Shown here in pieces: positions 1,093 to 52,498 of a DNA stretch of 64,000 bases. Location of the stretch: the IMG/VR virus record IMGVR_UViG_3300044641_009805, positions 1 through 64,000 of that record; one strand, given 5' to 3'. The number at the start of each line of letters is the position of its first letter. Position 1 is the stretch's first letter. Under the pieces are notes generated by a model. That model did no database searches. It was given only the letters and a program-made list of their open reading frames with translations, and had not been told where the DNA came from. Made by a program: the position numbers and the translations under genes.

Positions 1093-1336
1093 ACCCGGTT
1101 CACTTCTCAAGGTAAACCACCACGTGGTACCCGAACTCAGGTTCTACCGCGAACTCAAGGATGATATCCAATGGGATGATATCCAATGGGATGGAAAATC
1201 CAAACTATATCCCAACGATATCCTCATTTACCTCGGATCGGAAATGGTTCGTTTCGTTCTATTCGCCCATGTTTTCTCATCTTCCCAAGGTAAAACCGGT
1301 TACGCGGCTCTCACTTACCTCTCGGATCTCAAATGA
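1073..1336 (+). CDS. small SH3-like hypothetical protein
   Basis: MNSSTLKPGSLLKV...VFSSSQGKTGY; paralog of the next ORF. Confidence 0.65.
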   Translation: MNSSTLKPGSLLKVNHHVVPELRFYRELKDDIQWDDIQWDGKSKLYPNDILIYLGSEMVRFVLFAHVFSSSQGKTGYAALTYLSDLK

Positions 1337-1578
1337 AACACCCCGAATTTCCAGGAGGAACCCTTCTCAAGCTCCACGGTTCCCTTCTCTCCACCTCATT
1401 CCACAATGATGGTGTGGATAACCTATGGAATGGAGAACATCGAATCCATCCCCAGGAAATCCTCATTTCCCTGGGGAAAACCCTCAGGACTTTCACCCAC
1501 TACACCCTCGTTTTCTCTCCCACCCACAATCGGGCAGGTTACATTAGAACCGATCACATCTCGGAAATTCAACAGTGA
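1333..1578 (+). CDS. small SH3-like hypothetical protein
   Basis: FPGGTLLKL...VFSPTHNRAGYI. Confidence 0.65.
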   Translation: MKHPEFPGGTLLKLHGSLLSTSFHNDGVDNLWNGEHRIHPQEILISLGKTLRTFTHYTLVFSPTHNRAGYIRTDHISEIQQ

Positions 1579-1787
1579 AACCCGGTGATCTGGTGAGCAT
1601 CACCCACATCGTTGGGATTCGCATGGAAACCAAAACCACGGTAGGAATACTTCTCTCCTACGAACCGGTTGAACCCAACATGTACGATAACATCTACGAT
1701 CTTGAGATACTCACCACCGAAGGTAACGTAATCGGGCTCGGAATTTTTCACGGGGATAAACTGGAGGTGATCAATGAAGATTGGTGA
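1575..1787 (+). CDS. small SH3-like hypothetical protein
   Basis: MKPGDLVSI...LEVINE. Confidence 0.7.
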   Translation: MKPGDLVSITHIVGIRMETKTTVGILLSYEPVEPNMYDNIYDLEILTTEGNVIGLGIFHGDKLEVINEDW

Positions 1788-1986
1788 TCTACTCATCCCA
1801 CTCAACTCCTCCACATCCCACAAACATCATCCAGGATTGGTAACAGGTTTAACCGATAAAAGCTCCAACTTCAACGTGGTATACATCACCTGGAGGAATG
1901 GAGTAACCGATGGTTGGGATCACAACTTCGTTATCAAAAACTTTGAGGTTATCAGTGCACAAAACCCGAATCCCAAGTGTAAATGA
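1774..1986 (+). CDS. small SH3-like hypothetical protein
   Basis: MKIGDLLI...YITWRNG...FEVIS. Confidence 0.7.
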   Translation: MKIGDLLIPLNSSTSHKHHPGLVTGLTDKSSNFNVVYITWRNGVTDGWDHNFVIKNFEVISAQNPNPKCK

Positions 1987-1987
1987 T

Positions 1988-2143
1988 GTGATTCCAGGGG
2001 TACTGGTTCTCCACCATCTCACCCCAGAAATCGGAATTGTTCTCCGTGTAAATTGGGAGGTGGTTGAGTTACTATCGTGCAATGGATCGGTTGTTAGGTG
2101 GGAACTCGATTCATTTCGAAGCACCTATGAGATTCCACTATGA
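1988..2143 (+). CDS. small SH3-like hypothetical protein
   Basis: (V)IPGVLV...IGIVL; start uncertain (track ORF begins 1910). Confidence 0.5.
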   Translation: MIPGVLVLHHLTPEIGIVLRVNWEVVELLSCNGSVVRWELDSFRSTYEIPL

Positions 2144-2322
2144 AAAAAGGTGATCTGGTTCTAATCGATCATTATCATCCCAGAGATAAAACCTATGGGA
2201 TCTACATCAAGGATATTCAACTACGAGATCCTCGATACATACCATCATTTCCAACCTGTGAAATCATCACCTCCAATGGTTTACAGGTAATTGGAGTGGA
2301 AAGAATCCATGTACTCCTATGA
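2140..2322 (+). CDS. small SH3-like hypothetical protein
   Basis: MKKGDLVLI. Confidence 0.7.
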   Translation: MKKGDLVLIDHYHPRDKTYGIYIKDIQLRDPRYIPSFPTCEIITSNGLQVIGVERIHVLL

Positions 2323-2507
2323 AAATGAAACCCTCTGAGGTTCAGGTTGGAGATCTTATGATCACAACAGATTTTCTAGAAGCAGAGTTACAACTGGTAC
2401 TTCGAGTGGATCACAACCGGGATCTCGTTGAGATTTACAACACCAGGTTAGGAAAGGTGGAACACTATCGTTTATCCTGGGTTATGGGTTGTGAAAAGGT
2501 ATGTTAA
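2319..2507 (+). CDS. small SH3-like hypothetical protein
   Basis: VQVGDLMI. Confidence 0.65.
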   Translation: MKMKPSEVQVGDLMITTDFLEAELQLVLRVDHNRDLVEIYNTRLGKVEHYRLSWVMGCEKVC

Positions 2508-2959
2508 ACCTCTATTATTTCCTTTATCCAACTCCTAGGAATCGAAGGTAAGGATGTTCCTATTTCTCCATCCACACCATCAGGAAATTCATTCATAAAC
2601 TCATAGTAACCATCATCACCACTTCCAAACCTATCATCAGGAACCACATACTGGGGATTCAAATATTTCTTTGGAATTTCAACCCTAACCATCACCCCTT
2701 CATTGGTTACCCACCTAGGAGAATCATACCATCCCACGGTAAAATAAATTCCATGTGATTCCGATTGAAGTTTTAATCCAACCCTATCAATCGATTCCTT
2801 ATTACTCAATGGTGATTCATGGGTTACACGAAGAAAACCTCCACCCTCATCCGCAAGATGTTTTAAGGTGGAATAAAACCAAACCTTCTCAGGAATCCAA
2901 TCCTCTTCCTCCAGGTTTTCCCTAATCAATCTTCTCAAATCACCAAGTGAAATCTTCAT
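2504..2959 (-). CDS. LRxxIRE-leader protein with putative ADP-ribosyltransferase (Tpt1/KptA-like) fold
   Basis: N-term MKISLGDLRRLIRE; VTHES..SI..GL..GIYFT and C-terminal IPRSWI resemble ART/Tpt1 motifs (inference). Confidence 0.55.
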   Translation of the reverse strand: MKISLGDLRRLIRENLEEEDWIPEKVWFYSTLKHLADEGGGFLRVTHESPLSNKESIDRVGLKLQSESHGIYFTVGWYDSPRWVTNEGVMVRVEIPKKYLNPQYVVPDDRFGSGDDGYYEFMNEFPDGVDGEIGTSLPSIPRSWIKEIIEV

Positions 2960-2988
2960 GGGGTTAATTATACAATTGAGTTGATATT

Positions 2989-3210
2989 ATGGTTCCTGGT
3001 TCCCTAATCACTCCATCGTGTGCAACCGTTCACATGTATAAATCCATCGAGTTACACCTTGGAGAGTATGTTTCTTCATTTTCCTTCGGTGATTTTGGAA
3101 TCGTAATCGAAACTGGAATTTCACCTTGGGATGTTCAGTATCTAAAGGTTCTACTTCCAGATGGAAAAATTGGGTGGCTCCGCAGAGAAAAAGTGGAAGT
3201 TCTTCTATGA
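2989..3210 (+). CDS. small SH3-like hypothetical protein
   Basis: MVPGSLI...KVLLPDGKIGWL. Confidence 0.7.
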   Translation: MVPGSLITPSCATVHMYKSIELHLGEYVSSFSFGDFGIVIETGISPWDVQYLKVLLPDGKIGWLRREKVEVLL

Positions 3211-3383
3211 AAACCGGTGATCTGATCAAGTTCATCAACCTAACACCTTATGGTAAACGTGCGTACCTAGGGGTTGTTCTGGAATATCATGGAACTTGGG
3301 CGAAGATGTTGTGGTGTTCCGATGTTCATGAACAAATTCAAGATTCCATCATTGTTCCAAAACAATGGAAGGTTATCCAGTGA
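3207..3383 (+). CDS. small SH3-like hypothetical protein
   Basis: MKTGDLIKF; ATGA overlap. Confidence 0.65.
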   Translation: MKTGDLIKFINLTPYGKRAYLGVVLEYHGTWAKMLWCSDVHEQIQDSIIVPKQWKVIQ

Positions 3384-3577
3384 AACGGGGTGATCTTCTC
3401 CATTTTCCGGATGAACCACAATATGTTCACCGTGGAAAATTATACCTTGCCCTCAGGTTTTTCCAGTGGGAATCTCCACACAATGGGGTGGTATTCAATG
3501 AGGTTGATGTGTTGGAATTTGGAACCACCGAAATAAGAAAATTTAGGGTGGAACATCTCAAGGTGGTTGAACGGTGA
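3380..3577 (+). CDS. small SH3-like hypothetical protein
   Basis: (V)KRGDLLHF; GTGA overlap. Confidence 0.65.
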   Translation: MKRGDLLHFPDEPQYVHRGKLYLALRFFQWESPHNGVVFNEVDVLEFGTTEIRKFRVEHLKVVER

Positions 3578-3780
3578 AGATAGGTGATTTATTACTAATT
3601 AAAAACCCGTGTTGGTTGAGGGATGATCCTATTGGTGGTGGTAGTATTGAAAAATATCACCAAGGAACCATGGTAACTCTACTCCAGGAGGATGATCCGG
3701 AATTATACCACCACAAGGTTCTAACCCCGGATGGAAAAACCGGGTGGATCTTTAAGGATAACCTGGAGTTGATACAATGA
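3574..3780 (+). CDS. small SH3-like hypothetical protein
   Basis: MKIGDLLL...KVLTPDGKTGWI. Confidence 0.7.
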   Translation: MKIGDLLLIKNPCWLRDDPIGGGSIEKYHQGTMVTLLQEDDPELYHHKVLTPDGKTGWIFKDNLELIQ

Positions 3781-4225: not shown

Positions 4226-4415
4226 TAAACACCGTGGATTTTTACCTGGTGATCAGGTGAAGGTGGTTAATCCCTGGTACACCAGGAAACCCCCACAACT
4301 CGGTGTTGTTATCGAGGTGGTTCCTAGTGGTGGTGTGGTTAATTCTAACAGGATAAAATTGGTGGTTCCTGAAGGAATTACCTGGAGATGGGATCATGAG
4401 TGCGAGAGAATTTGA
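4218..4415 (+). CDS. small SH3-like hypothetical protein
   Basis: FLPGDQVKV...GVVIEV. Confidence 0.65.
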   Translation: MSDKHRGFLPGDQVKVVNPWYTRKPPQLGVVIEVVPSGGVVNSNRIKLVVPEGITWRWDHECERI

Positions 4416-7154: not shown

Positions 7155-8702
7155 TCACTGGTCTTCGAACCATGAGATTGAAAAAGTAGCTTCTGAAGTG
7201 TTCTTATTCGTTTTGGCTGCTATTGTCAATATCTCGCCGCTCGTGAGGAAGAAATTTTCTGCCTGTATGGTCAAGATGGTAGCCTCGTTCGCACCAACTA
7301 TGAAGCTTTTGACGAGTTGAGTATTAGGTCCGATGCTTATTGAAGTCGCAGACAGATCAGCTGCAGCTATTGATTTATTTGTATCAACGTGTTGAAAGTT
7401 GACAGGACCTCCGAGCACGGCATTCTTGTATACATAGACTTCCGTCAAAATTGTGCTCGTGGCATTGCCTGTGTCCGTACCGACCGATATGTTGAAAAGA
7501 TCTATCTCGCCGTAATTACATTGACCCAGGAAGTTTCTGTTGGCACGTATGGTCAACACAGGTGTGAGCGTGGTGTCAAGATCAAGTGCTGCCCCGACGC
7601 GAGCAGAACCCGTAGCAAATGCTGGTCCTATGTTACGAATCACCAATCCTTCAGCGAAAACTCCTGCTGAAGCACCTTTGATGGTGACAGGTGTAGCCAA
7701 CGATCCGCTGTTGTAGACACCCCACTTGGCGGTCATCTGGGGATTTCTGAGGACAGTGGTGGACCTGCTGTTGGCGTTCTTTATCATGTGGCACCCAGCC
7801 AACAGGCCCGTTTCGGAGTTCTCCACCGCAAAGAATGCATTGCCGAACCCGAGATACTGGAAGCCGACGGAGTAAACATTTCCATACCTCGGGTTCAAGG
7901 CAAATCTCGATTCACCTGTTCCGTCCATCTTATCGATGTTCCACTGGGACTGTGAGATGAATGTCTCGACCGGTAGTTCTCCCGTTTGAACCACCGCCGT
8001 TGTGGCTATCTGAGTTGCTCCGTTGAACAGAGAAAAAGTTCCTCCTATGGGCCCTGGGCGTCTCGATACGAAGAAGACGGTTCCATCGATGGATTCAGCA
8101 TCCCAGCCTGAACCGACCTGTGAGTAATCTGCCTGTGATAATTGGTAAGAAGTCTGGTTGGCGGAACTACCGCCATTTATCGCGACAGTTCTCGTGGCCC
8201 CTCCGAGGGTGACCGTGATGGTGGCAGCTCCGACTGGGGGTACCGTGATGGAAAAGCTCCTGATTTCTCGTTTGGATCTCTCGCGGTGAAGTATGCCGAA
8301 CTCATTATTCCGTTGAGCGAAGAAGTAACCGGTCTCTTCGTTACCGATCCCTGCCAGCTGAAGCGTGTTGGGTGCACCTGGATCGAAGATCGCAGTCATC
8401 CTACACATGGAGCCCTGTCCAGGGCGATACTTGAGACTTCGAGACAGCCTCACCTCAGCGGATCCTGATGTAGATGTTCCTGAAGAGCTCGTCATGATTC
8501 CTAGTGAAGCGGCCACAAATGCACCAGTCCCAGCTGACGATGTGGTCCATTGTACTGGATTTACGGTGTAGATGAACGCAGCCTGAGCCGTGGGGTGTGC
8601 TTCGGACACAAGGGGAGACCCGAAAGGACCGACAGCGTTAGCGTTGATGCTTCCCTCGCTGGCAAATAAAGATTTCTTACCAATCGTCGTAAATCCTGAC
8701 AT
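7155..8702 (-). CDS. putative virion structural protein (beta-rich)
   Basis: 515 aa Ser/Thr/Gly-rich; YRPGQG and FQYLGFG segments seen in phage structural proteins; GGAG RBS. Confidence 0.55.
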   Translation of the reverse strand: MSGFTTIGKKSLFASEGSINANAVGPFGSPLVSEAHPTAQAAFIYTVNPVQWTTSSAGTGAFVAASLGIMTSSSGTSTSGSAEVRLSRSLKYRPGQGSMCRMTAIFDPGAPNTLQLAGIGNEETGYFFAQRNNEFGILHRERSKREIRSFSITVPPVGAATITVTLGGATRTVAINGGSSANQTSYQLSQADYSQVGSGWDAESIDGTVFFVSRRPGPIGGTFSLFNGATQIATTAVVQTGELPVETFISQSQWNIDKMDGTGESRFALNPRYGNVYSVGFQYLGFGNAFFAVENSETGLLAGCHMIKNANSRSTTVLRNPQMTAKWGVYNSGSLATPVTIKGASAGVFAEGLVIRNIGPAFATGSARVGAALDLDTTLTPVLTIRANRNFLGQCNYGEIDLFNISVGTDTGNATSTILTEVYVYKNAVLGGPVNFQHVDTNKSIAAADLSATSISIGPNTQLVKSFIVGANEATILTIQAENFFLTSGEILTIAAKTNKNTSEATFSISWFEDQ

Positions 8703-8755
8703 ATTTCTCCCCTAACAAAAATCTTGTAGTATAATTAGGTAAGGGATCATAAAAT

Positions 8756-9148
8756 ATGTCGCTAAGTTGGCCACAGAATGGAGAGTATTACGCACCAGCC
8801 TATCAGGTATCGGCGTTACCCTATCTGTCCTCATCAATTATATCTGTCGGGAACGTGCACAAGTATGAGTTCCCCTACGTCACCAAGTTCATCAACATCG
8901 TCAACAGAGGTGCTAACGTCGGCGACAAAATTGCTCTGGCATTTACCGAAAATGGTCTTCGGACAGGAAACTACATCACGCTCGATCAAGGTGTCGCCAT
9001 CGACCAAGAGATCAGGACTTCCGTTCTCTTCATCTCAGGTTCCGATGGGACATCCGTCGACTATCAGATCTTCTGCGGGCTCACGACAATCCCAACCAAA
9101 AACTTCTTGACGCTCACCGGCTCCAACGGACACTCAGGCGTCGGTTGA
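8756..9148 (+). CDS. putative structural protein, paralog of 19075..19479
   Basis: Shared YQVSALP/FQTSGLP, FP.VTK.I, FTENG..NY, LTTI, LTGS..GVG. Confidence 0.6.
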   Translation: MSLSWPQNGEYYAPAYQVSALPYLSSSIISVGNVHKYEFPYVTKFINIVNRGANVGDKIALAFTENGLRTGNYITLDQGVAIDQEIRTSVLFISGSDGTSVDYQIFCGLTTIPTKNFLTLTGSNGHSGVG

Positions 9149-9252
9149 TCGCAACAGAAAAATAATTGCACGACGGCGTGTAAAAGCCCGCATACCTAGG
9201 TTACTATAGGATCATCAAACAACGGAGGAAACGAACTCTAAGTTGTTGATTC

Positions 9253-9561
9253 GGAACGGTAAATCAATAGGTTCAGATTAGCGGTCTCATCAAAATGGTG
9301 ACTTCAATCAGTAATGATTGTCGAAAATCGGATGAATTCGGGGAAGTCTAAGTCGCAAGATATGATAATCCCGAGCCAAGTCCACCAAGCATGGTGGAAA
9401 GGTGTAGAGACTACCTGGTGTTGAATGATCTTTCAACGTAATACAGGGTTAGCGTCCGACACCCTAACAGTTAGGCTGAGGGTGATGATATAGTCCACAG
9501 AGTCAAGAAATTGACACAAATGTGAAACCGAAATGTGTGGGTTCGAGTCCCACCCGTTCCA
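9253..9561 (+). tRNA. tRNA with CAU anticodon (probably Ile2, lysidine type), interrupted by a group I intron
   Basis: Exon1 9253-9290 ends CTCAT and exon2 9525-9561 starts AAACCG; acceptor GGAACGG/CCGTTCC-A; T-loop GTTCGAGTC. Confidence 0.85.
9291..9524 (+). ncRNA. group I self-splicing intron in the tRNA anticodon loop (after position 36)
   Basis: P1 with U.G wobble (TCAT|CA-aaa-TGGTGA); core elements AATTCGGGGAA, AATCCCGAGCC, GTAGAGACTA, GATATAGTCC; terminal G. Confidence 0.9.
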
Positions 9562-9571
9562 CAAGGAACCT

Positions 9572-10360
9572 TCAGCATAAACCGCTGAAGGTTCCTTTTT
9601 TTATTTCTTCGATCTCTTGCTTTTTGAGAACAATCAATTTTTCAGGAAACTGAGACCATTTGGCTAGATCTCTTTCTCTTTCATAGCCCTTGACTTCGAT
9701 GTATAGATCTAGATTAGGCAGATAAAAGTCAGGAAAGTATGTTCTAGATCCGTTCCATTCATAGGGAAACCCTTTCGTACACCTTTGAGGATCAAGACCA
9801 TTTATTTTTGCCCATTTATAAAATTCTACTTCCCATTTACCTTGAAGTTTGATTCCGTCCATGATAACTTGCTTTACTCTGCCTCTTCTTCCACCCATGA
9901 AAGCTTCAGGATTTTCAGCGATTCTTTTCTTCATCATTTCTGATATTTGTTTTCTCTTTTCTTCAGACATCTTGAAAGGACGCTTTTGCTTTCTAATAAA
10001 ATTTCTTTTTTGACGAGCATCATATCTTTTCTTTTCTTCTTCAGACATGTCTTCTATGGTGAGATATTCAGGAGTTTCTCTTCCTCCCCTATGTTCATCA
10101 CACCACTTCTTCGTTTTGCTGGCTGCAAGAAATATTTTTCCACATTTTGCGCATGTAATCTCATATCTTTTTTCAAAAGTTTTTCCTGCGCTCCATCCTT
10201 TTTGTCCCATCAACTTTTTTGAAACCTTTTCGTTAATCTCTTTTCTCTTTTTAGAAGTTGAAGTAGATCTAGCACAAGGCTGGCTACAAAATCTCCCTGA
10301 TCCATAGAATTTTTCTGGTATTTTTCCACATTTTTCACACGGTTTTAGATTATTTTCCAT
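9572..10360 (-). CDS. free-standing homing-endonuclease-like protein (Zn ribbons + NUMOD3-like + PD-(D/E)XK nuclease)
   Basis: CEKC..FCSQPC, CAKC, MSEEKRKQIS, YFPDFYLP..IEVKG. Confidence 0.75.
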   Translation of the reverse strand: MENNLKPCEKCGKIPEKFYGSGRFCSQPCARSTSTSKKRKEINEKVSKKLMGQKGWSAGKTFEKRYEITCAKCGKIFLAASKTKKWCDEHRGGRETPEYLTIEDMSEEEKKRYDARQKRNFIRKQKRPFKMSEEKRKQISEMMKKRIAENPEAFMGGRRGRVKQVIMDGIKLQGKWEVEFYKWAKINGLDPQRCTKGFPYEWNGSRTYFPDFYLPNLDLYIEVKGYERERDLAKWSQFPEKLIVLKKQEIEEIKKGTFSGLC

Positions 10361-10505
10361 GACGATAAGTATAGAACTTGAACCGAGAAGTAGACTCTTG
10401 ATCTATATTTTACGAAAAAAGTAGTCTAATCCCAAACAAAAAACCGGCCAGGATTTCTCCCAGGCCGGTCATGTTAGGTGAACTGATTATATAATCAGGC
10501 GATCA

Positions 10506-11060
10506 TCACCAGCCGCCGCCGCCGCCTCCACCACCACCGAAGCCGCCACCGCCGCTCATCACGTAAACAACGATTTTGAAAGAGATTCCAGAAACAACAG
10601 CGATGAAATTATACATTGTGAAACCAGGTAACTCGGGATTCGTATTTGAATAAGTGCTGCCGTAATAATCAGAGAAGTATATGTCACCGAGGTTGAGTGG
10701 CACGTTTCCGCTGGCTATTTGAGAGACAGCGTTGAAAGACGAATCTGATGTTGATATCGTATACGCCTGAGATGCATATGTTGATGTCAACGAATTGGAC
10801 ATTGCGAAGAAGTTCTGGAATTCAACTACGTCGCCTGGATTGACTGGGACCGACACGTTATTCCCTGTCATAAAGTCTGGGTAGGTCCAATATACTGCTG
10901 GACCGCCTCCGCCTCCGCCTCCGCCTCCGCCACCGCCGCCACCGCCGCCACCATCGAGTGGTGCCGTGCCTGCTCCCATTCTTCCTCCCAGTCCCAAATC
11001 AATCAATTTGATTGTTTGACCTGGTGTATAATTTTCTGTTTTTTTCCATTTAATGGCCAT
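10506..11060 (-). CDS. Gly-linker putative virion appendage/decoration protein
   Basis: MAIKW start with GGAG RBS; poly-Gly linkers; beta-rich domain. Confidence 0.55.
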   Translation of the reverse strand: MAIKWKKTENYTPGQTIKLIDLGLGGRMGAGTAPLDGGGGGGGGGGGGGGGGGPAVYWTYPDFMTGNNVSVPVNPGDVVEFQNFFAMSNSLTSTYASQAYTISTSDSSFNAVSQIASGNVPLNLGDIYFSDYYGSTYSNTNPELPGFTMYNFIAVVSGISFKIVVYVMSGGGGFGGGGGGGGGW

Positions 11061-11146
11061 AAAGATCTCCTGATCGAACGCGATGTTGAGCGCTCGACGC
11101 AAATATAATTATGTAATCTTTAGTAGAATCGTTGTAATATAGAATC

Positions 11147-14100
11147 ATGTTCCGAAAATTCGCAGTTGTTTTTTCGATGATTCTGTTTGTTGTTGTAGGA
11201 GTCTACTCTACCGCTCGAGCCCAGTTCACTCCGCCCCTTGATTCTAAGGTGAAGATTCCGAACGTTCTCCTTCTCGTCGACACGAGTGCCTCAATGACTT
11301 GGGCACTGGATGGAAATAACGCAGATTGCAAGGACGAGCTGAACCCGAAGAAGGCGCGTTACACCATCCTTGGTGAGGTTCTTACAGGAACTGTGGATGA
11401 TCTCGATTGTTGGTCAAACAACGATCCGCTCAACATCGACGGTCCGCCTGTTCCCCTTATGTCGAACTCAGAACGACATCAACCCGGTGGTCAGAACTGT
11501 GTCCCTACTTTAAACCTTGATGTTGATATCATCAATTCCCTCAAGGCACAACCCTTCGGTTGGCCTTACGAAGCCGCAGATAAAGACAATTCATCCGCAA
11601 TCACTTACTGTGGAGGCAAAACTTCTCTCAAGTTCGCACGATGTTTCTCCTCTTCGGGTTGGAGTAATCGAGATGTTTGCAGCAAGGCCACAATCGGGTG
11701 GAACCAGGCGGCCGATGGATTGCTGGACACATATGGATCCAAGATTCGATTTGGAATGATGTCTTTCGATTCACTTGTGTGGCCAGGATATTCAACATCC
11801 GACCTCTATTCCAACAAGACCATGGCATGGTGGACACCTGAGACAGGAGGTCCTGTAACTTTTACATATGATCCATTGTGTAGGAACAACACGATGGGAC
11901 ACTATTGCTTCCTGTATTCATATTCGCTTATGTACTATGATACGGCTGAGTGGTCATATTGGCACGGCACGGGAAGCACCTTGAGCTCAACATGGTTGAC
12001 AGGAGCAAGATCTGCAACACTGTTTCCTACGACTGCAATCGTCGGCGGGGCATACACACTTGCAAGCTCGGACATTGGAGCAAGAAATTCTAGGGCTCTT
12101 CCTCACAAGGGCCGCATGATTGGTTTTGGTCATCCGGACGCTGTTGCGACCGATACTGTTGCTCACAATGAAATGGTTCAGGATGCAATCCTTGGATTAT
12201 CCACGAACCTCGAACACAACACTCCTCTTGCTGCTCTCATGCGAGATGCCTTCGAGTTTGTTGCCAATGATGTTTCCACCAATGGTGTCACAATTCCACA
12301 CCCAACGACATCTGTTCCCAATTTGGTAACAATCGGTCCTCAAACTGATCCATATTTCTCATCCACAGCTCGATGCCGGGATACACTAGTCATCCTCATC
12401 ACCGACGGAGAGCCTACTGGGGATCTAAACGATAGAATGTCCTTTTGGGCAGGAAGATTGGCAACCGAGCAGGATGTCAAGACAATTGTATTTGGAATTG
12501 GATTGGAAACAGCTCGATGGAAACCTGGATCAACCATCCTCACAAAGAAGTGCGATGATCTAGCTCCATCAGATTACAGCTCAGTTTCCACCGGAACAAC
12601 CATGTGCACACGAGATGGCTTGAGCTGGAAATACGCGGATAATCCACTCTTCACATTTGGCCTGACAACTACAGATCGATCCGCCATTCGTGCCTGTTGT
12701 AACCTGTTGGAAACTGCGATCCTTGGAGATCCAACCAATTCCTACGGTCAGGTTCCATATTTTCCCAACGATCAGGCACAGCTAAAACAAACACTCGACA
12801 CGATCCTCAAGTCGATCGCAGGAACAACTGTGAGCAGAACAGTTCCGGTCTTCGCCAACATCTCTTCAACGTTTCAGTCAGGTAATGCTCCTGCTTCATA
12901 CTACGAGCTACGATCCGCACTCATTCCTGCCTCTAAGCCCACCAGTGGAACCCTCGAGCGGGTGAGGTATGCGTGCAATAATTCATTCGAACCTATCAGA
13001 CAAAGCGTTGAGGAGACCAAGGGAGATCAATTCCACAAGAACCTCGATGCCACATCTGTCAGGCCACGAAAGTTCATCACGGTGGTTCCTCTGAAGGCCG
13101 GAAGTGTTGTGAAACCAATGTGGACAGTGAGACCTGCAGTGGTTGTCGAGGATCAACTCATGGGTTCACCTGCAACATCAGGAAACTTTGTCAGGCTGGA
13201 TGTAACAGCTCCTGATCTCACAGCTCCATACCAACCTGATTTTGGTGTAGGTATCGACACGCTTGCATCTACTGTCAATTCCTTGGGCGGAACATATCCA
13301 AAAAGTTCAGAGCTGTTGAACCTTTCCAATTCCGACAAGAGCACATGTCTCAGTCAGGTTGGAACAACCGACCTAGAGGAATGCGCCAAACGCGTGTTGC
13401 AGTGGTACGGAGGAAGTCCTCAGGTTTATTCCCTTGGTGCAGGTAAGTTCTCACCATCACGAGATCCAAATGTTTGCGGAGGATGGGACAAGTGTGGACC
13501 GCTGGGTGCGATCTTCCGTTCCAACCCAGTCATCGTTGAACCGCCAAGCCAAAATGCTGCTGAGCAGGCCTACTCGAACAATAGACCAACAGGAACAACA
13601 TCCTTCTACCAGCAACAAAGAACTCGTCCAACGATGTTGTATTCACAAACAATCGATGGTATGCTGCATGCATTTGTTCTATCGAAGAATGCTGCCCTTC
13701 CCGATTCGTATGCAAACGTATCCACGGTAGACTCGCTTGAGAACAACGAGCTATGGAGCTTCATTCCTCCTGCGATCCTTCCACAGATCTGGCCCAACTT
13801 CAAGACAGAGGCTCGATTGCTTGATGGGCCTCTAACTGTTGGCAACGTTGTTTTCAGCAGGAACATGACGCAGACTTCTGAGGGAACAACAAATCTTTCA
13901 GGATTCAGGACGGTCCTCGTTGGTTCATCAGGATATGGAGATTCTGGGTTCTATTATGCGGTGGATGTGACAAATCCAATTGAACCACGTTTCCTGTGGC
14001 AGCTCGTGAATTCATCCGGTGGTAATGCCTTGTTTGGCAAGGTTCTTCCAGGGGCAGCAATTACCATGTTGAAGATCAAGGATCCAAAGGATGGGATCAT

Positions 14101-17438: not shown

Positions 17439-18047
17439 ATGATCAGGTTCCTAGGAAAGCTACCTCGGAAGTGCGTTGTTGCCTTCAGCAGCGGAGTTGA
17501 TTCGGTGGCTGTAACTGATTTCCTTCTGAACGGTAAACGTGATGTTCACCTGGCGTTTTTTCACCATGGAACTGCGACGTCCGATGAGGCCGAGGTATTC
17601 GCCAAGGAATTTTCCAAGGAACGTAACCTCACGCTCTCAATCGGGCGGATCAGCGGTGAAAAACCTCCTGGGGAATCGATGGAGGAATACTGGAGGAATG
17701 AAAGGTATCGTTTCCTTTCGATGTACGAATTTCCTGTTATTACCGCCCATCACCTTGGAGACGCGGTGGAAACATGGATCTTCAATTCTCTCCATGGAAA
17801 TCCTAGGGTGTTGCCCTACCAGAGGAACAACGTCATCAGGCCTTTTCTCATCACCCCAAAGTCTGAGCTGATTGATTGGGCGGAGAAAAAAGGATTGAAG
17901 TGGATGGAGGATGAATCCAACAACGATCTGAAGTACATGAGGAACTTGATCAGGCACAAGATCGTTCCTGAAGCGATGGTGGTTAATCCTGGTCTTGACA
18001 AGGTTGTAAAGAAGATGTATATTAAAGAAGAGATGAAAGAGGGGTAA
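17439..18047 (+). CDS. tilS: tRNA(Ile)-lysidine synthetase, compact catalytic-domain-only form
   Basis: PP-loop VAFSSGVDS, HHG, RYRFL, TAHHLGDAVET, IRPFL, EDESN..Y.RN.IRH. Confidence 0.9.
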   Translation: MIRFLGKLPRKCVVAFSSGVDSVAVTDFLLNGKRDVHLAFFHHGTATSDEAEVFAKEFSKERNLTLSIGRISGEKPPGESMEEYWRNERYRFLSMYEFPVITAHHLGDAVETWIFNSLHGNPRVLPYQRNNVIRPFLITPKSELIDWAEKKGLKWMEDESNNDLKYMRNLIRHKIVPEAMVVNPGLDKVVKKMYIKEEMKEG

Positions 18048-20761: not shown

Positions 20762-21136
20762 GGGGCCAAAATAGTTTCGACGTGGTTTTGACATCGATCT
20801 ATGCAGGCCCAGGTGCACGAGGAACCTGGTAAAAATCCAAGTGACGTATAGTTGCCAACGACAACGGCTACGCTCCAGCTGCCCTAGCGGCCTGACTGGT
20901 TGGGTGGTGACAACCTAGAAACAGAAAGTCACAATCAATGGTTATCCTCATTGTATGAGGTGGGTTTCTCTCGGAAGGTGGTTCCGGAAGACGACTAACG
21001 GGTTTCGATCCGACCGGTCGTAAAATTGGTCAGATCGAATAGACTAGGATGGCGTCGATAAAATCATTCCAAGCCTGTGGACGAATTGTTTGATTGAAGA
21101 ATTGCGGACACCGGGGCAGTACCGGTTGGCTCCACC
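20762..21136 (+). ncRNA. ssrA: tmRNA; tag peptide ANDNGYAPAALAA (20854-20895)
   Basis: 5' GGGGCCA..TTTCGAC; 3' T-arm + TGGCTCCACC with G3.U70; resume codon GCC AAC GAC AAC; tag ends LAA*. Confidence 0.92.
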
Positions 21137-21165
21137 TGTTGTATATTTATAATCTGTAAAAACAT

Positions 21166-52424: not shown

Positions 52425-52498
52425 TGGAACGTGGTGGATTCGAACCACCGACCTTCTCCTTATCAGAGAGACTATCTAACCAACTGATATAACGTTCC
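52425..52498 (-). tRNA. tRNA-Ile(GAT)
   Basis: Loop CT-GAT-AA. Confidence 0.9.

What the first reader, a model, noticed from the sequence alone, without database searches (positions are those of the whole stretch)
9253..10360. Group I intron in a phage tRNA(CAU), abutted by a free-standing endonuclease
Seen: a 234-nt ORF-less group I intron sits after anticodon position 36. A convergent Zn/NUMOD3/PD-(D/E)XK nuclease gene ends ~10 nt past the tRNA. The tRNA acceptor and D arms resemble the tRNA-Ile(GAT) at 52425 (GGAACG..ATCA..GGTT..AGAT). Established: the Azoarcus tRNA-Ile(CAU) intron occupies this site, and collaborative homing between an intron and an adjacent free-standing endonuclease is known in phages. 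Inference: the nuclease cuts intron-less alleles and spreads the pair.
Basis: partly seen in the sequence, partly recalled or inferred. Interest (0 to 1): 0.65.

Follow-up and report, generated by a model that had tools for sequence, protein, structure and literature searches.

The report
Phage tRNA intron beside homing nuclease
A lake-water jumbo phage carries its only tRNA(CAU) gene split by a self-splicing-type group I intron, with a selfish-looking DNA nuclease gene next to it; related phages show that intron and nuclease come and go separately, so this is a polymorphic mobile-element hot spot of a kind not yet described for phage tRNA genes.

Summary
It comprises a tRNA(CAU) 5' exon (9253-9290), a 234-nt ORF-less group I intron (9291-9524; Rfam 93.6 bits), a 3' exon (9525-9561), and a convergent 262-aa nuclease ORF (9572-10360, minus strand). 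A related phage (L091) carries the same tRNA uninterrupted: 73/75 identical, and the two differences form a compensatory pair. So the insertion lies exactly between positions 36 and 37. Eight homologous pre-tRNAs support the fold: 98.6% of cells are paired, 49 of 86 pairs show compensatory changes, and the U·G at the splice site is invariant. The phage encodes TilS, so the tRNA is probably tRNA-Ile2.

The nuclease has a PD-(D/E)XK C-terminal domain (invariant E177, D211, E222, K224). Its family sits in phage tRNA arrays.

The "pair spreads together" idea is only partly supported. At the tRNA(CAU)-tilS locus all four states occur: empty, nuclease only, intron only, and both. Nucleases 91% identical flank both intron-less and intron-containing tRNAs. 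The intron is 88-94% identical between cassettes whose exons (42-71%) and nuclease genes (54-73%) have diverged.

The best reading is two separately mobile elements on one tRNA gene. No cleavage target and no splicing was shown. Cultured E. coli and Klebsiella jumbo phages carry the same intron, unannotated.

The parts
9236..10432 (.). Replaceable cassette: tRNA(CAU) with its intron, a terminator and the nuclease gene. In the sister phage L002 the flanks are 94% and 78% identical, but this interval holds a different cassette of the same design.
   Evidence: blastn of L002 against the window; sequence and ORFs of L002 4282-5467
9253..9290 (+). tRNA(CAU) 5' exon, positions 1-36. The anticodon CAT is at 9288-9290.
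   Evidence: Cloverleaf read; 37/38 identical to the 5' half of the uninterrupted tRNA in L091; helices show covariation
9291..9524 (+). ORF-less group I intron, 234 nt. The internal guide GUGA (9298-9301) pairs with U33-C34-A35-U36, with a U36·G9298 wobble. The terminal G is at 9524. The P7 strands lie at about 9406-9410 and 9489-9493. An extra hairpin (9414-9450) sits between P7 and P3'.
   Evidence: Rfam 93.6 bits; RNAalifold and pair counts on 8 homologues; splice-site comparison
9525..9561 (+). tRNA(CAU) 3' exon, positions 37-73. No CCA is encoded.
   Evidence: 36/37 identical to the 3' half of the L091 tRNA
9563..9604 (+). Intrinsic terminator of the tRNA transcript: a 14-bp stem plus a T run. 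It overlaps the last codons of the nuclease ORF on the other strand. The same hairpin is kept in L002, L006, L082, L083, L087 and L094.
   Evidence: Terminator scan; sequences
9572..10360 (-). Free-standing nuclease gene, 262 aa, 36% G+C. Cys4 motif: aa 8-29 (10274-10339). Cys3His motif: aa 70-90 (10091-10153). Helical linker with NUMOD3-like repeats: aa ~105-150 (9911-10048). PD-(D/E)XK domain: aa 161-262 (9575-9880), with invariant E177, D211, E222 and K224.
   Evidence: ORF list; phrog_15137 'endonuclease' at 1.6e-19; invariant columns in 120 homologues; AF2 model with pLDDT 82, >90 over the C-terminal domain; VIA matches to TnsA Z 8.9, I-Bth0305I 7.2, Vsr 7.1; G+C
10407..10435 (-). Promoter-like site upstream of the nuclease gene (TTGGGA, 17 nt, TAAAAT). 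It lies just after the terminator of the preceding minus-strand gene (10448-10463).
   Evidence: Consensus scan only; weak evidence
17439..18047 (+). Phage tilS: the N-terminal catalytic domain of tRNA(Ile)-lysidine synthetase, which would convert C34 of this tRNA. In related phages the tRNA(CAU) lies directly upstream of this gene.
   Evidence: PF01171 108.5 bits; TIGR02432 109.7 bits against a cut-off of 93.6; 61-69% identical to the tilS next to the cassettes in L006, L014, L077 and L081
52424..52498 (-). tRNA-Ile(GAU), which shares its acceptor stem and discriminator with the interrupted tRNA.
   Evidence: ARAGORN; half-by-half comparison

Best explanation
Two separate selfish elements sit on the phage's single tRNA(CAU) gene, which is probably tRNA-Ile2, read as AUA after lysidine formation by the phage's own TilS.

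(1) The intron. A group I intron of the bacterial tRNA-intron type lies between positions 36 and 37. Its guide sequence GUGA pairs only with U33 plus the CAU anticodon. It can therefore fold and splice in any tRNA(CAU), whatever the stems look like. After transcription it should remove itself by the usual two transesterifications and leave a normal 75-nt tRNA.

(2) The nuclease. A free-standing PD-(D/E)XK DNA endonuclease gene is inserted just 3' of the tRNA, convergent with it and sharing its terminator hairpin. It belongs to a large phage family that lives among tRNA genes. Its nuclease domain is conserved while its N-terminal DNA-binding modules are swapped between members. The most likely mode of action is 'intron-less homing', as with SegB of T4 and T6. 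In a mixed infection it cuts the tRNA(CAU)/tilS region of a phage that lacks it. Repair from the nuclease-bearing genome then copies the nuclease gene and whatever lies beside it, sometimes including the intron.

The intron therefore gains occasional lifts from the nuclease, but it also spreads and persists on its own.

Shown: the anatomy, the precise intron-less allele, structural covariation, all four occupancy states, and the uncoupled divergence.

Inferred: splicing, DNA cleavage, the target and the direction of transfer.

Sub-probabilities:
- Functional self-splicing intron: 0.9.
- Ile2 identity: 0.7.
- Nuclease is a homing-type DNase: 0.75.
- Its target lies in or next to tRNA(CAU): 0.45.
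- It mobilises the intron at least sometimes: 0.35.
For: Intron and fold:
- Rfam full-length hit at 93.6 bits.
- On 8 pre-tRNAs, 98.6% of cells are paired against 31-42% for slid controls. 49 of 86 pairs show compensatory change. The U·G at the splice site is invariant. The pair next to it appears as C-G, U-A and G-C. P7 is kept with one compensatory change.

Precise empty allele: L091 and L087.

Ile2 identity:
- No other CAU tRNA in the genome.
- tilS scores above the curated cut-off.
- The acceptor stem is shared with tRNA-Ile(GAU).

Nuclease:
- Invariant E177, D211, E222 and K224.
- The fold-search list is dominated by PD-(D/E)XK nucleases.
- 20 family loci hold 100 co-oriented tRNA genes.
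- 36% G+C against 48-50% in the flanks.

Decay and turnover:
- In-frame TGA at a conserved Trp in L002.
- A 23-codon remnant in L082.
- The window and L002 carry different cassettes at one site. Their nucleases share only the C-terminal domain, at 47%.

Independence of the two elements:
- Four occupancy states.
- Patchy intron state on the nuclease tree.
- Intron 88-94% identical, against exons 42-71% and nuclease DNA 54-73%.

Precedent: SegB lies beside the T6 tRNA array and cuts inside tRNA genes (PMC13096335).

RNA libraries: contigs cover only 9231-9486, and separately 9743-10004, of the 1.7-kb stretch laid.
Against: - No splice junction was seen. Only contigs were available, and a 75-nt product would not assemble.
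- No cleavage data exist, and no target site can be read from the sequence.
- The tRNAs beside near-identical nucleases differ widely (L006 against L094). This is awkward if the adjacent tRNA type is the target.
- Exon sequences differ within 3 nt of the intron boundaries between cassettes that share a 94%-identical intron. Classical double-strand-break homing with co-conversion is therefore not obviously how the intron moved.
- The TilS-anchored sample is small: 3 nuclease-only, 2 intron-only and about 7 empty distinct sites.
- Met or fMet identity of the tRNA is not excluded.
Confidence: 0.6

Rival explanations
1. Strict collaborative homing. The nuclease recognises the uninterrupted anticodon-loop region of tRNA(CAU). 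The intron disrupts that site and so protects its own genome. The intron and nuclease are then copied together into cut alleles.
For: - The convergent nuclease/intron-tRNA arrangement recurs in the window, L072, L006 and L074, with a second intron type in L002 and L286, and co-oriented in L012.
- The four nucleases closest to the window's (56-100% identity) all flank an intron.
- Each intron type goes with its own nuclease subfamily.
- An exact intron-less allele exists (L091/L087). A lake DNA run that also holds the window's cassette has a contig joining this tRNA's last 30 bases directly to the start of tilS.
- In cultured Escherichia phage Turkey5, an unrelated HNH endonuclease gene starts 20 nt after the intron-containing tRNA.
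- The mechanism is established for the psbA intron with F-CphI, and for mobE with I-TevIII (review PMC3984707).
Against: - L094/L099 carry a nuclease 91% identical to that of L006 beside an intron-less tRNA(CAU). The same is true for L077 (55%), L103/L104, L105 and L014.
- The intron stands without a nuclease in L081/L084.
- Intron divergence is uncoupled from exon and nuclease divergence, and no co-conversion tracts are visible.
Confidence: 0.25
2. The nuclease serves the phage rather than itself. It could process the tRNA transcript. It could also make breaks that amplify or exchange the tRNA locus under pressure from host tRNA-targeting defences. On this view its position beside the intron is incidental.
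For: - The family is embedded in tRNA arrays and co-oriented with them.
- SegB-driven amplification of a tRNA locus defeats Septu in T6 (PMC13096335).
- tRNA-splicing endonucleases appear among the weaker fold matches (Z about 5).
- The tRNA(CAU) bodies at this locus are unusually diverse, including forms with long variable arms.
Against: - Presence and absence among close relatives, an in-frame stop and deletion remnants are marks of a dispensable selfish gene.
- The invariant residues are those of a metal-dependent DNase, E...D...ExK, not the Tyr-His-Lys set of RNA-splicing endonucleases.
- The zinc-finger and NUMOD3-like modules are typical DNA-binding parts of homing endonucleases.
Confidence: 0.1
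3. The interrupted gene is a dead tRNA: the intron no longer splices and the locus is decaying.
For: - No spliced product was observed.
- There is a G27-A43 mismatch in the anticodon stem.
- There is an unusual extra hairpin between P7 and P3'.
Against: - All helices are kept with compensatory changes across 8 phages, the exon helices included.
- The 27-43 mismatch is also present in the uninterrupted alleles.
- It is the genome's only CAU tRNA, and the phage keeps tilS.
- The exons are 73/75 identical to an uninterrupted allele.
Confidence: 0.04

Closest known systems
Azoarcus sp. BH72 tRNA-Ile(CAU) group I intron (subgroup IC3)
   Same: The host gene type is the same and so is the insertion site, after anticodon base 36. 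P1 has the same design, CAU paired with GUG and a U36·G wobble. Both are ORF-less. The site and P1 of Azoarcus are from my own knowledge (Reinhold-Hurek and Shub 1992). An Azoarcus-like copy in L012 aligns with the window intron over the core.
   Different: Only 58% identical to the Azoarcus-like L012 intron. The window intron is 234 nt against 192 in L012. It has an extra hairpin between P7 and P3' and a longer P9 region. It lies in a phage, not a bacterium, and has a nuclease gene beside it.
Cyanobacterial tRNA-fMet intron encoding I-Ssp6803I (PD-(D/E)XK homing endonuclease)
   Same: [quoted passage not shown]
   Different: Here the nuclease is free-standing, not inside the intron. There is no sequence match to I-Ssp6803I and only a weak fold match (2ost Z 4.4). 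It also carries zinc-finger and helical N-terminal modules.
Collaborative (trans) homing: cyanophage S-PM2 psbA intron with F-CphI, and T4 mobE with the I-TevIII intron
   Same: An ORF-less or defunct intron lies next to a free-standing phage endonuclease gene. Genomes with only one of the two elements exist (review PMC3984707).
   Different: The host gene is a tRNA, not a protein-coding gene. The nuclease family is different. Convergence of the cleavage site and the intron site is untested here, and nucleases 91% identical coexist with intron-less alleles.
SegB of phages T4 and T6 (free-standing GIY-YIG endonuclease beside the tRNA array)
   Same: A free-standing endonuclease gene is embedded among phage tRNA genes. 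SegB cuts inside tRNA genes and drives preferential inheritance or amplification of that region (PMC13096335).
   Different: The catalytic fold is GIY-YIG, not PD-(D/E)XK. No intron is involved.
HNH endonuclease genes next to tRNA genes in large cultured phages (T5 F-Tfl enzymes; Muenster, Turkey5, WPEC5)
   Same: Free-standing endonuclease genes stand directly beside tRNA genes. In Turkey5 and Muenster they stand beside a tRNA(CAU) that carries an intron about 70% identical to the window's.
   Different: The nuclease family is unrelated. The T5 enzymology is from my own knowledge, and these records do not annotate the intron.

Membership tests
Group I intron (Rfam RF00028) | Covariance-model score above the curated gathering score, over the full model | tested here: met
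   93.6 bits against 50, model positions 1-253
Group I intron (Rfam RF00028) | P1 helix between the 5' exon end and an internal guide, with a U·G wobble at the splice site | tested here: met
   U36·G is present in 8/8 homologues. The neighbouring pair is C-G (6), U-A (1) or G-C (1).
Group I intron (Rfam RF00028) | Terminal G at the 3' end of the intron | tested here: met
   G9524. All 7 homologues also end in G before A37-A38.
Group I intron (Rfam RF00028) | Conserved core helices P3-P8, including the P3/P7 pseudoknot, kept by covariation | tested here: met
   17 helices, 98.6% of cells paired, 49/86 pairs compensatory, P7 5 bp with one compensatory change
Group I intron (Rfam RF00028) | Self-splicing with guanosine and Mg2+ | not testable with these tools
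   RNA-library contigs cover the unspliced region only. No joint was reported.
Subgroup IC3 (bacterial tRNA introns) | Assignment by subgroup-specific structure | tested here: inconclusive
   It aligns with an Azoarcus-like intron (L012). It also shares the P4-P6 core motif with more than 120 bacterial loci, the majority of which ARAGORN reads as intron-containing tRNA genes. No subgroup models were available, and the extra hairpin between P7 and P3' is atypical.
tRNA-Ile2 (CAU, lysidine-modified) | CAU anticodon together with a lysidine synthetase available | tested here: met
   Anticodon at 9288-9290. Phage tilS N-domain scores 109.7 bits against a cut-off of 93.6. The tRNA lies directly upstream of tilS in relatives.
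tRNA-Ile2 (CAU, lysidine-modified) | Discrimination from elongator and initiator tRNA-Met | tested here: inconclusive
   The acceptor stem and A73 are shared with the phage tRNA-Ile(GAU), and the genome has no other CAU tRNA. No Ile2-specific model was run.
PD-(D/E)XK nuclease superfamily | Catalytic signature E...(P)D...(D/E)XK | tested here: met
   E177, P210-D211, E222 and K224 are invariant in 120 sequences.
PD-(D/E)XK nuclease superfamily | Restriction-endonuclease-like fold | tested here: met
   Residues 161-262 match TnsA (Z 8.9), I-Bth0305I (7.2), VRR-NUC (7.1), Vsr (7.1) and Bax1 (7.0), and most rows of the list are nucleases of this fold. Foldseek E-values are weak, 0.03 at best.
NUMOD3 DNA-binding motif (PF07460) | Pfam match | tested here: not met
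   No PF07460 hit at E<=1 for the window protein. Two relatives carry it, and the family consensus has an SxETRxKxS motif.
FCS-type zinc finger (PF21319) | Pfam score above the gathering score | tested here: inconclusive
   17.7 bits against 26.6. PDB 2l8e FCS finger at E 0.0036. The four Cys are present (C8, C11, C25, C29).
Homing endonuclease gene (functional class) | Sporadic presence among close relatives, with decayed copies | tested here: met
   Present and absent at the same locus; in-frame stop in L002; remnant in L082
Homing endonuclease gene (functional class) | Site-specific cleavage of the allele that lacks the gene | not testable with these tools
   No assay possible
Collaborative homing pair | The endonuclease cleavage site coincides with the intron insertion site, and the intron confers immunity | not testable with these tools
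   Indirect evidence against a need for the intron: nucleases of the same clade flank intron-less tRNA(CAU).
I-Ssp6803I family | Sequence or close structural relationship | tested here: not met
   No phmmer hit in PDB sequences. 2ost Z 4.4, rank 34.

The most novel reading that the evidence does not exclude
The tRNA(CAU)-tilS locus of this jumbo-phage group is an arms-race hot spot. Free-standing nucleases that cut the tRNA(CAU) gene select for any change in its DNA that leaves the mature tRNA working. Candidates are group I introns at two different positions (36/37 and 33/34), inserted long variable arms, and wholesale stem swaps. On this reading, introns in phage tRNA genes act as armour against homing endonucleases. 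Because the intron's guide needs only U33 plus CAU, it may also hop between diverged tRNA(CAU) genes without exon co-conversion, for example by reverse splicing. That would explain a 94%-identical intron in exons that are 42-70% identical.
Probability: 0.2. Interest if true: 0.8.

Novelty: new variant of a known kind. Interest (0 to 1): 0.6.

Why it matters
The 2014 review of bacterial group I introns states that all phage introns seen to date were in protein-coding genes, despite the many phage tRNA genes (PMC3984707). My literature searches found no later report.

This work shows a phage tRNA intron with an exact empty allele. It also shows a second intron type in the same tRNA class, and further IMG/VR contigs with the same intron core in genes that ARAGORN reads as tRNA-Arg(UCU) and tRNA-Leu; I did not examine those by hand.

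It defines a large, uncharacterised family of free-standing PD-(D/E)XK nucleases that live among phage tRNA genes. It also gives a natural locus in which all four combinations of intron and nuclease exist. That is the material needed to test how ORF-less introns and free-standing endonucleases come together.

The same intron sits unannotated in cultured E. coli and Klebsiella jumbo phages, which have intron-less sister phages. The questions can therefore be taken straight to the bench. There is also a practical lesson: standard tRNA finders miss or mislabel these genes, so phage tRNA repertoires are undercounted.

Tried and rejected
- Megablast of 8000-11500 against GenBank phages found nothing. 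Only the 11-mer blastn search found the cultured-phage introns.
- ARAGORN default misses the gene. With introns allowed it misplaces the splice by 2 nt and names it Gln(CUG). I rejected this because the 5' exon would end in C, and in L019 and L020 the intron would end in A.
- The P1 register in the Rfam alignment puts a U-A pair at the splice site. I rejected it in favour of UCAU/GUGA with U36·G, which alone is kept in L006 and L012.
- The Rfam gathering scan missed the L002 intron. It scores 41 bits in E-value mode.
- phmmer against PDB sequences gave only the FCS finger. Foldseek against PDB gave no hit at E<=0.001.
- NCBIfam has no family for the nuclease.
- The one read-laying run showed no splice joint. 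Only assembled contigs were available, so this says nothing either way.
- In the nuclease tree, the L002 row was cut in the wrong frame (branch length 9.8) and must be ignored. Its relationship rests on BLASTP and tblastn instead.
- Two papers on tRNA intron positions (PMC110692, PMC179611) are not held. The Azoarcus site is therefore from my own knowledge.
Intron-less alleles were reached through the neighbouring tilS gene and compared exon by exon.
- The large representative-protein search, the complex prediction and the Atlas search were not needed.
Full report
**What is there**

The window is the first 64 kb of a 278-kb IMG/VR virus record, 84% complete by CheckV. The record is seen in at least 18 lake and freshwater DNA runs. 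The gene to the left of the finding (7155-8702, minus strand) is a virion structural protein (phrog_1645).

Rfam's group I intron model matches 9278-9517 over its whole length at 93.6 bits, against a gathering score of 50. It is the only such match in the genome. Reading the sequence gives these parts:
- a tRNA 5' exon at 9253-9290, ending CT-CAT;
- an intron at 9291-9524, 234 nt, ending in G;
- a 3' exon at 9525-9561.

Together the exons form a normal cloverleaf. A 14-bp terminator hairpin with a T run follows at 9563-9604. A 262-aa ORF runs the other way at 9572-10360. Its stop codon is 10 nt from the tRNA, and its last codons overlap the hairpin.

**Where exactly the intron sits**

ARAGORN misses the gene by default. 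With introns allowed it finds the 234-nt intron but shifts it 2 nt and reads Gln(CUG). Three lines of evidence fix the site between positions 36 and 37.
- Only that placement gives a U before the 5' splice site and a G at the intron's end in all eight homologues.
- Only the P1 register UCAU/GUGA, with U36·G, is kept in all eight. The pair next to it occurs as C-G, U-A and G-C.
- The related phage contig L091 carries the same tRNA uninterrupted. It matches the exons at 37/38 and 36/37. The two differences form the compensatory pair 2-71, and the junction is exactly CAT|AA.

The uninterrupted alleles were reached through the neighbouring tilS gene and compared exon by exon.

**Is the intron likely to work?**

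I aligned eight pre-tRNAs: the window, L072, L006, L074, L081, two cultured phages and an Azoarcus-like copy in L012. I counted pairs for a structure with the four tRNA helices, P1 to P9 and the P7 pseudoknot.
- 98.6% of cells are paired, against 31-42% when the partners are slid.
- 49 of 86 pairs show changes on both sides.
- No shuffle reached the observed values.

The phage clade has an extra hairpin between P7 and P3' (window 9414-9450) that the Azoarcus-like copy lacks.

Two river metatranscriptome assemblies contain contigs that cover 9231-9452 and 9302-9486 and nothing else of the 1.7 kb laid. A third covers 9743-10004, inside the nuclease ORF. This fits a stable structured RNA, but it does not show splicing. 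No joint was reported, and only contigs were available.

**Which tRNA**

The genome has 14 other tRNA genes and none with CAU. The window encodes the catalytic N-domain of lysidine synthetase TilS at 17439-18047 (TIGR02432, 109.7 bits, cut-off 93.6). In related phages the tRNA(CAU) lies directly upstream of tilS. The 5' half is the best match among all the genome's tRNAs (29/38). I take it as tRNA-Ile2 with probability about 0.7. No Ile2-specific model was run.

**The nuclease**

- Pfam gives nothing above cut-off.
- PHROGs gives phrog_15137, 'endonuclease', at 1.6e-19.
- The word search found 430 relatives, none with an informative name.
- In an alignment of 120 of them, W176, E177, Y200, Y208, P210, D211, F212, E222, K224, G225 and D231 are invariant. 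This is the E...PD...ExK signature.
- An AlphaFold model (pLDDT 82, above 90 over residues 161-262) matches TnsA (Z 8.9), the I-Bth0305I catalytic domain (7.2), VRR-NUC and Vsr (7.1), and Bax1 (7.0). Most of the list consists of nucleases of this fold.
- I-Ssp6803I, the PD-(D/E)XK enzyme of the cyanobacterial tRNA-fMet intron, is only a distant fold match (Z 4.4) and has no sequence match.
- The N-terminal half has a Cys4 motif with weak FCS-finger similarity and a Cys3His motif. Helices follow that resemble NUMOD3 but do not score as such.
- The gene is 36% G+C against 48-50% in its flanks.

**The family's habitat**

Twenty IMG/VR loci fetched with the family alignment hold 100 tRNA genes, all co-oriented with the nuclease gene. 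This is a family of free-standing nucleases that lives in phage tRNA arrays. None lies near any of about 120 bacterial loci carrying the same intron core motif.

**The comparative picture at this locus**

The nearest relatives of the window's nuclease all have the same convergent arrangement with an intron-containing tRNA(CAU). These are L072 (71% identity), L006 (62%) and L074 (56%).

More distant members flank uninterrupted tRNA(CAU): L077 (55%) and L014 (44%).

L012 (39%) has the nuclease gene upstream of, and co-oriented with, an Azoarcus-like intron-containing tRNA.

The usual neighbourhood is NADAR, PTH2, tRNA(CAU), [nuclease], tilS. Sampling 80 loci through tilS, which is blind to both elements, gave all four states:
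- empty: L083, L087, L088-L091, L096-L098, L101, L102;
- nuclease only: L094/L099, L103/L104, L105;
- intron only: L084 (the same contig as L081) and L082.

The fourth state, both together, is the one seen in L006 and its like, reached through the nuclease rather than through this sample.

L094 carries a nuclease 91% identical to that of L006, but beside a quite different, intron-less tRNA(CAU). L082 keeps only the last 23 codons of the nuclease gene, that is, the terminator hairpin and a little more. On a maximum-likelihood tree of the nucleases the intron state is patchy. The groupings are (L074 with intron, (L006 with intron, L094 without)), (window and L072 with intron), and a clade whose one member with a known tRNA (L077) lacks the intron. 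The mis-framed L002 row in that tree must be ignored.

**Uncoupled divergence**

Between the window and L072, L006 and L074, the intron is 94%, 88% and 88-91% identical. The exons are 42-71% identical and the nuclease gene 54-73% at the DNA level.

The window's exons are closest to uninterrupted tRNAs (L091, L087, L102), not to the exons that carry the most similar intron. Differences begin within 3 nt of the intron boundaries.

The intron has therefore moved between diverged tRNA(CAU) genes, or exons have been exchanged around it. This fits a guide sequence that needs only U33 plus CAU. How it moved is open. The lack of co-conversion tracts is not what simple double-strand-break homing predicts.

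**A second cassette at the same site**

The sister phage L002 has flanks 94% and 78% identical to the window. At exactly this position (window 9236-10432) it holds a different tRNA(CAU). That tRNA carries a different group I intron (41 bits) between positions 33 and 34. Its nuclease shares only the C-terminal domain with the window's (47%) and has an in-frame TGA where the family has Trp.

The same 33/34 intron type is in L082 and L286. Its P1 (GCU/GGC with U33·G) shows a G-C to A-U exchange between L002 and L082. L286 again has a convergent nuclease, of the subfamily found in L002 and L105. By ARAGORN's approximate placement, the 33/34 site also appears in bacterial tRNA(CAU) genes (19 of the fetched loci are read as interrupted tRNA(CAU)).

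**Cultured phages**

The 11-mer blastn search found an intron about 70% identical in two groups: Escherichia phages Turkey5 and TH47, and Klebsiella phages Muenster, KP13-7, RCIP0023, phiKp_21 and one more record. In Turkey5 and Muenster, whose sequences I read, it interrupts a tRNA(CAU) at 36/37 in an unannotated gap of the tRNA array. A free-standing HNH endonuclease gene starts 20 nt (Turkey5) or about 240 nt (Muenster) downstream. Sister phages such as WPEC5 and vB_Ec-M-J match the Turkey5 flank at 98-99% up to or within 10 nt of the last base of the 5' exon and carry an annotated, uninterrupted tRNA-Met there; I read the sequence for WPEC5.

**Interpretation**

The anatomy fits two separately mobile elements that have converged on one conserved tRNA gene. 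The nuclease most likely behaves like SegB, a free-standing enzyme beside the T6 tRNA array that cuts within tRNA genes (PMC13096335). It may give the intron occasional lifts.

In that model the nuclease cuts the intron-less site, the intron protects, and the pair spreads as a unit. The evidence against it is the nuclease-only genomes and the uncoupled divergence.

The 2014 review states that all phage introns then known were in protein-coding genes (PMC3984707). I found no later report of a phage tRNA intron in the held literature. I rate this a new variant of a known kind.

Noticed in passing
window 20762-21137 (+): The phage genome encodes a tmRNA (Rfam RF00023, 76 bits). Distant relatives L003 and L004 also carry tmRNA genes, with tag peptides ANNNKHFALAA and ANNNAHFDSVAVAA.
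   Followed up: no
window 17439-18047 (+): The phage encodes a TilS made of the N-terminal catalytic domain only, 202 aa. The family is 61-69% identical across this jumbo-phage group, with at least 271 relatives in IMG/VR.
   Followed up: partly
L002 4241-5100 (+); stop at about L002 5021-5023: The nuclease gene of the sister phage has an in-frame TGA exactly where the family has an almost invariant Trp. The reading frame continues to the conserved C-terminus, so this is a recent nonsense mutation or a sequencing variant.
   Followed up: partly
L083 2825-2910, L088 2899-2984, L094 1891-1973, L105 2014-2097: Some tRNA(CAU) genes at the tilS locus have a long extra arm in the variable region (83-86 nt in total). 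This is odd for Ile or Met tRNAs. They occur both with and without the adjacent nuclease.
   Followed up: no
L019 2468-2772 (PQ471516.1 about 289050-289354); L020 2457-2764 (MT708547.1 about 302826-303133): Cultured Escherichia phage Turkey5 (and TH47) and Klebsiella phage Muenster (and four more records) carry an intron-containing tRNA(CAU) that their GenBank records do not annotate.
   Followed up: yes
L282, L290, L292, L295 (tRNA-Arg UCU); L296 and L026 (tRNA-Leu UAA); L293 (tRNA CAU): Other IMG/VR phage contigs carry group I introns of the same core type in other tRNA genes. ARAGORN's splice placement for these is only approximate.
   Followed up: partly
window 9414-9450: An extra hairpin lies between P7 and P3' of the intron. 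It is kept with compensatory changes in the seven phage copies and is absent from the Azoarcus-like copy. This is an unusual place for a peripheral element.
   Followed up: partly
window 9533-9562, DNA run X6: An 82-nt contig from a lake DNA run joins the last 30 bases of this tRNA directly to the start of tilS. The same lake therefore holds a phage with the tRNA(CAU)-tilS arrangement without the nuclease.
   Followed up: partly
L006 about 4340-4410 (minus strand): About 60 nt upstream of the intron-containing tRNA lies a fragment that looks like the 5' half of another tRNA (acceptor and D arm only). It may be a scar of an earlier replacement.
   Followed up: no
window 10506-11102 (-): The ORF next to the cassette encodes runs of up to 17 glycines. 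Its L002 counterpart differs in the length of these runs.
   Followed up: no
L021 about 1290-3780 (OP793884.1): In Vibrio phage vB_VpaM_R16F the terminase large subunit is annotated in five pieces. Group I intron-like sequences related to the window's intron lie between the pieces (nhmmer hits at 2074-2260, 2501-2736 and 3196-3351).
   Followed up: no
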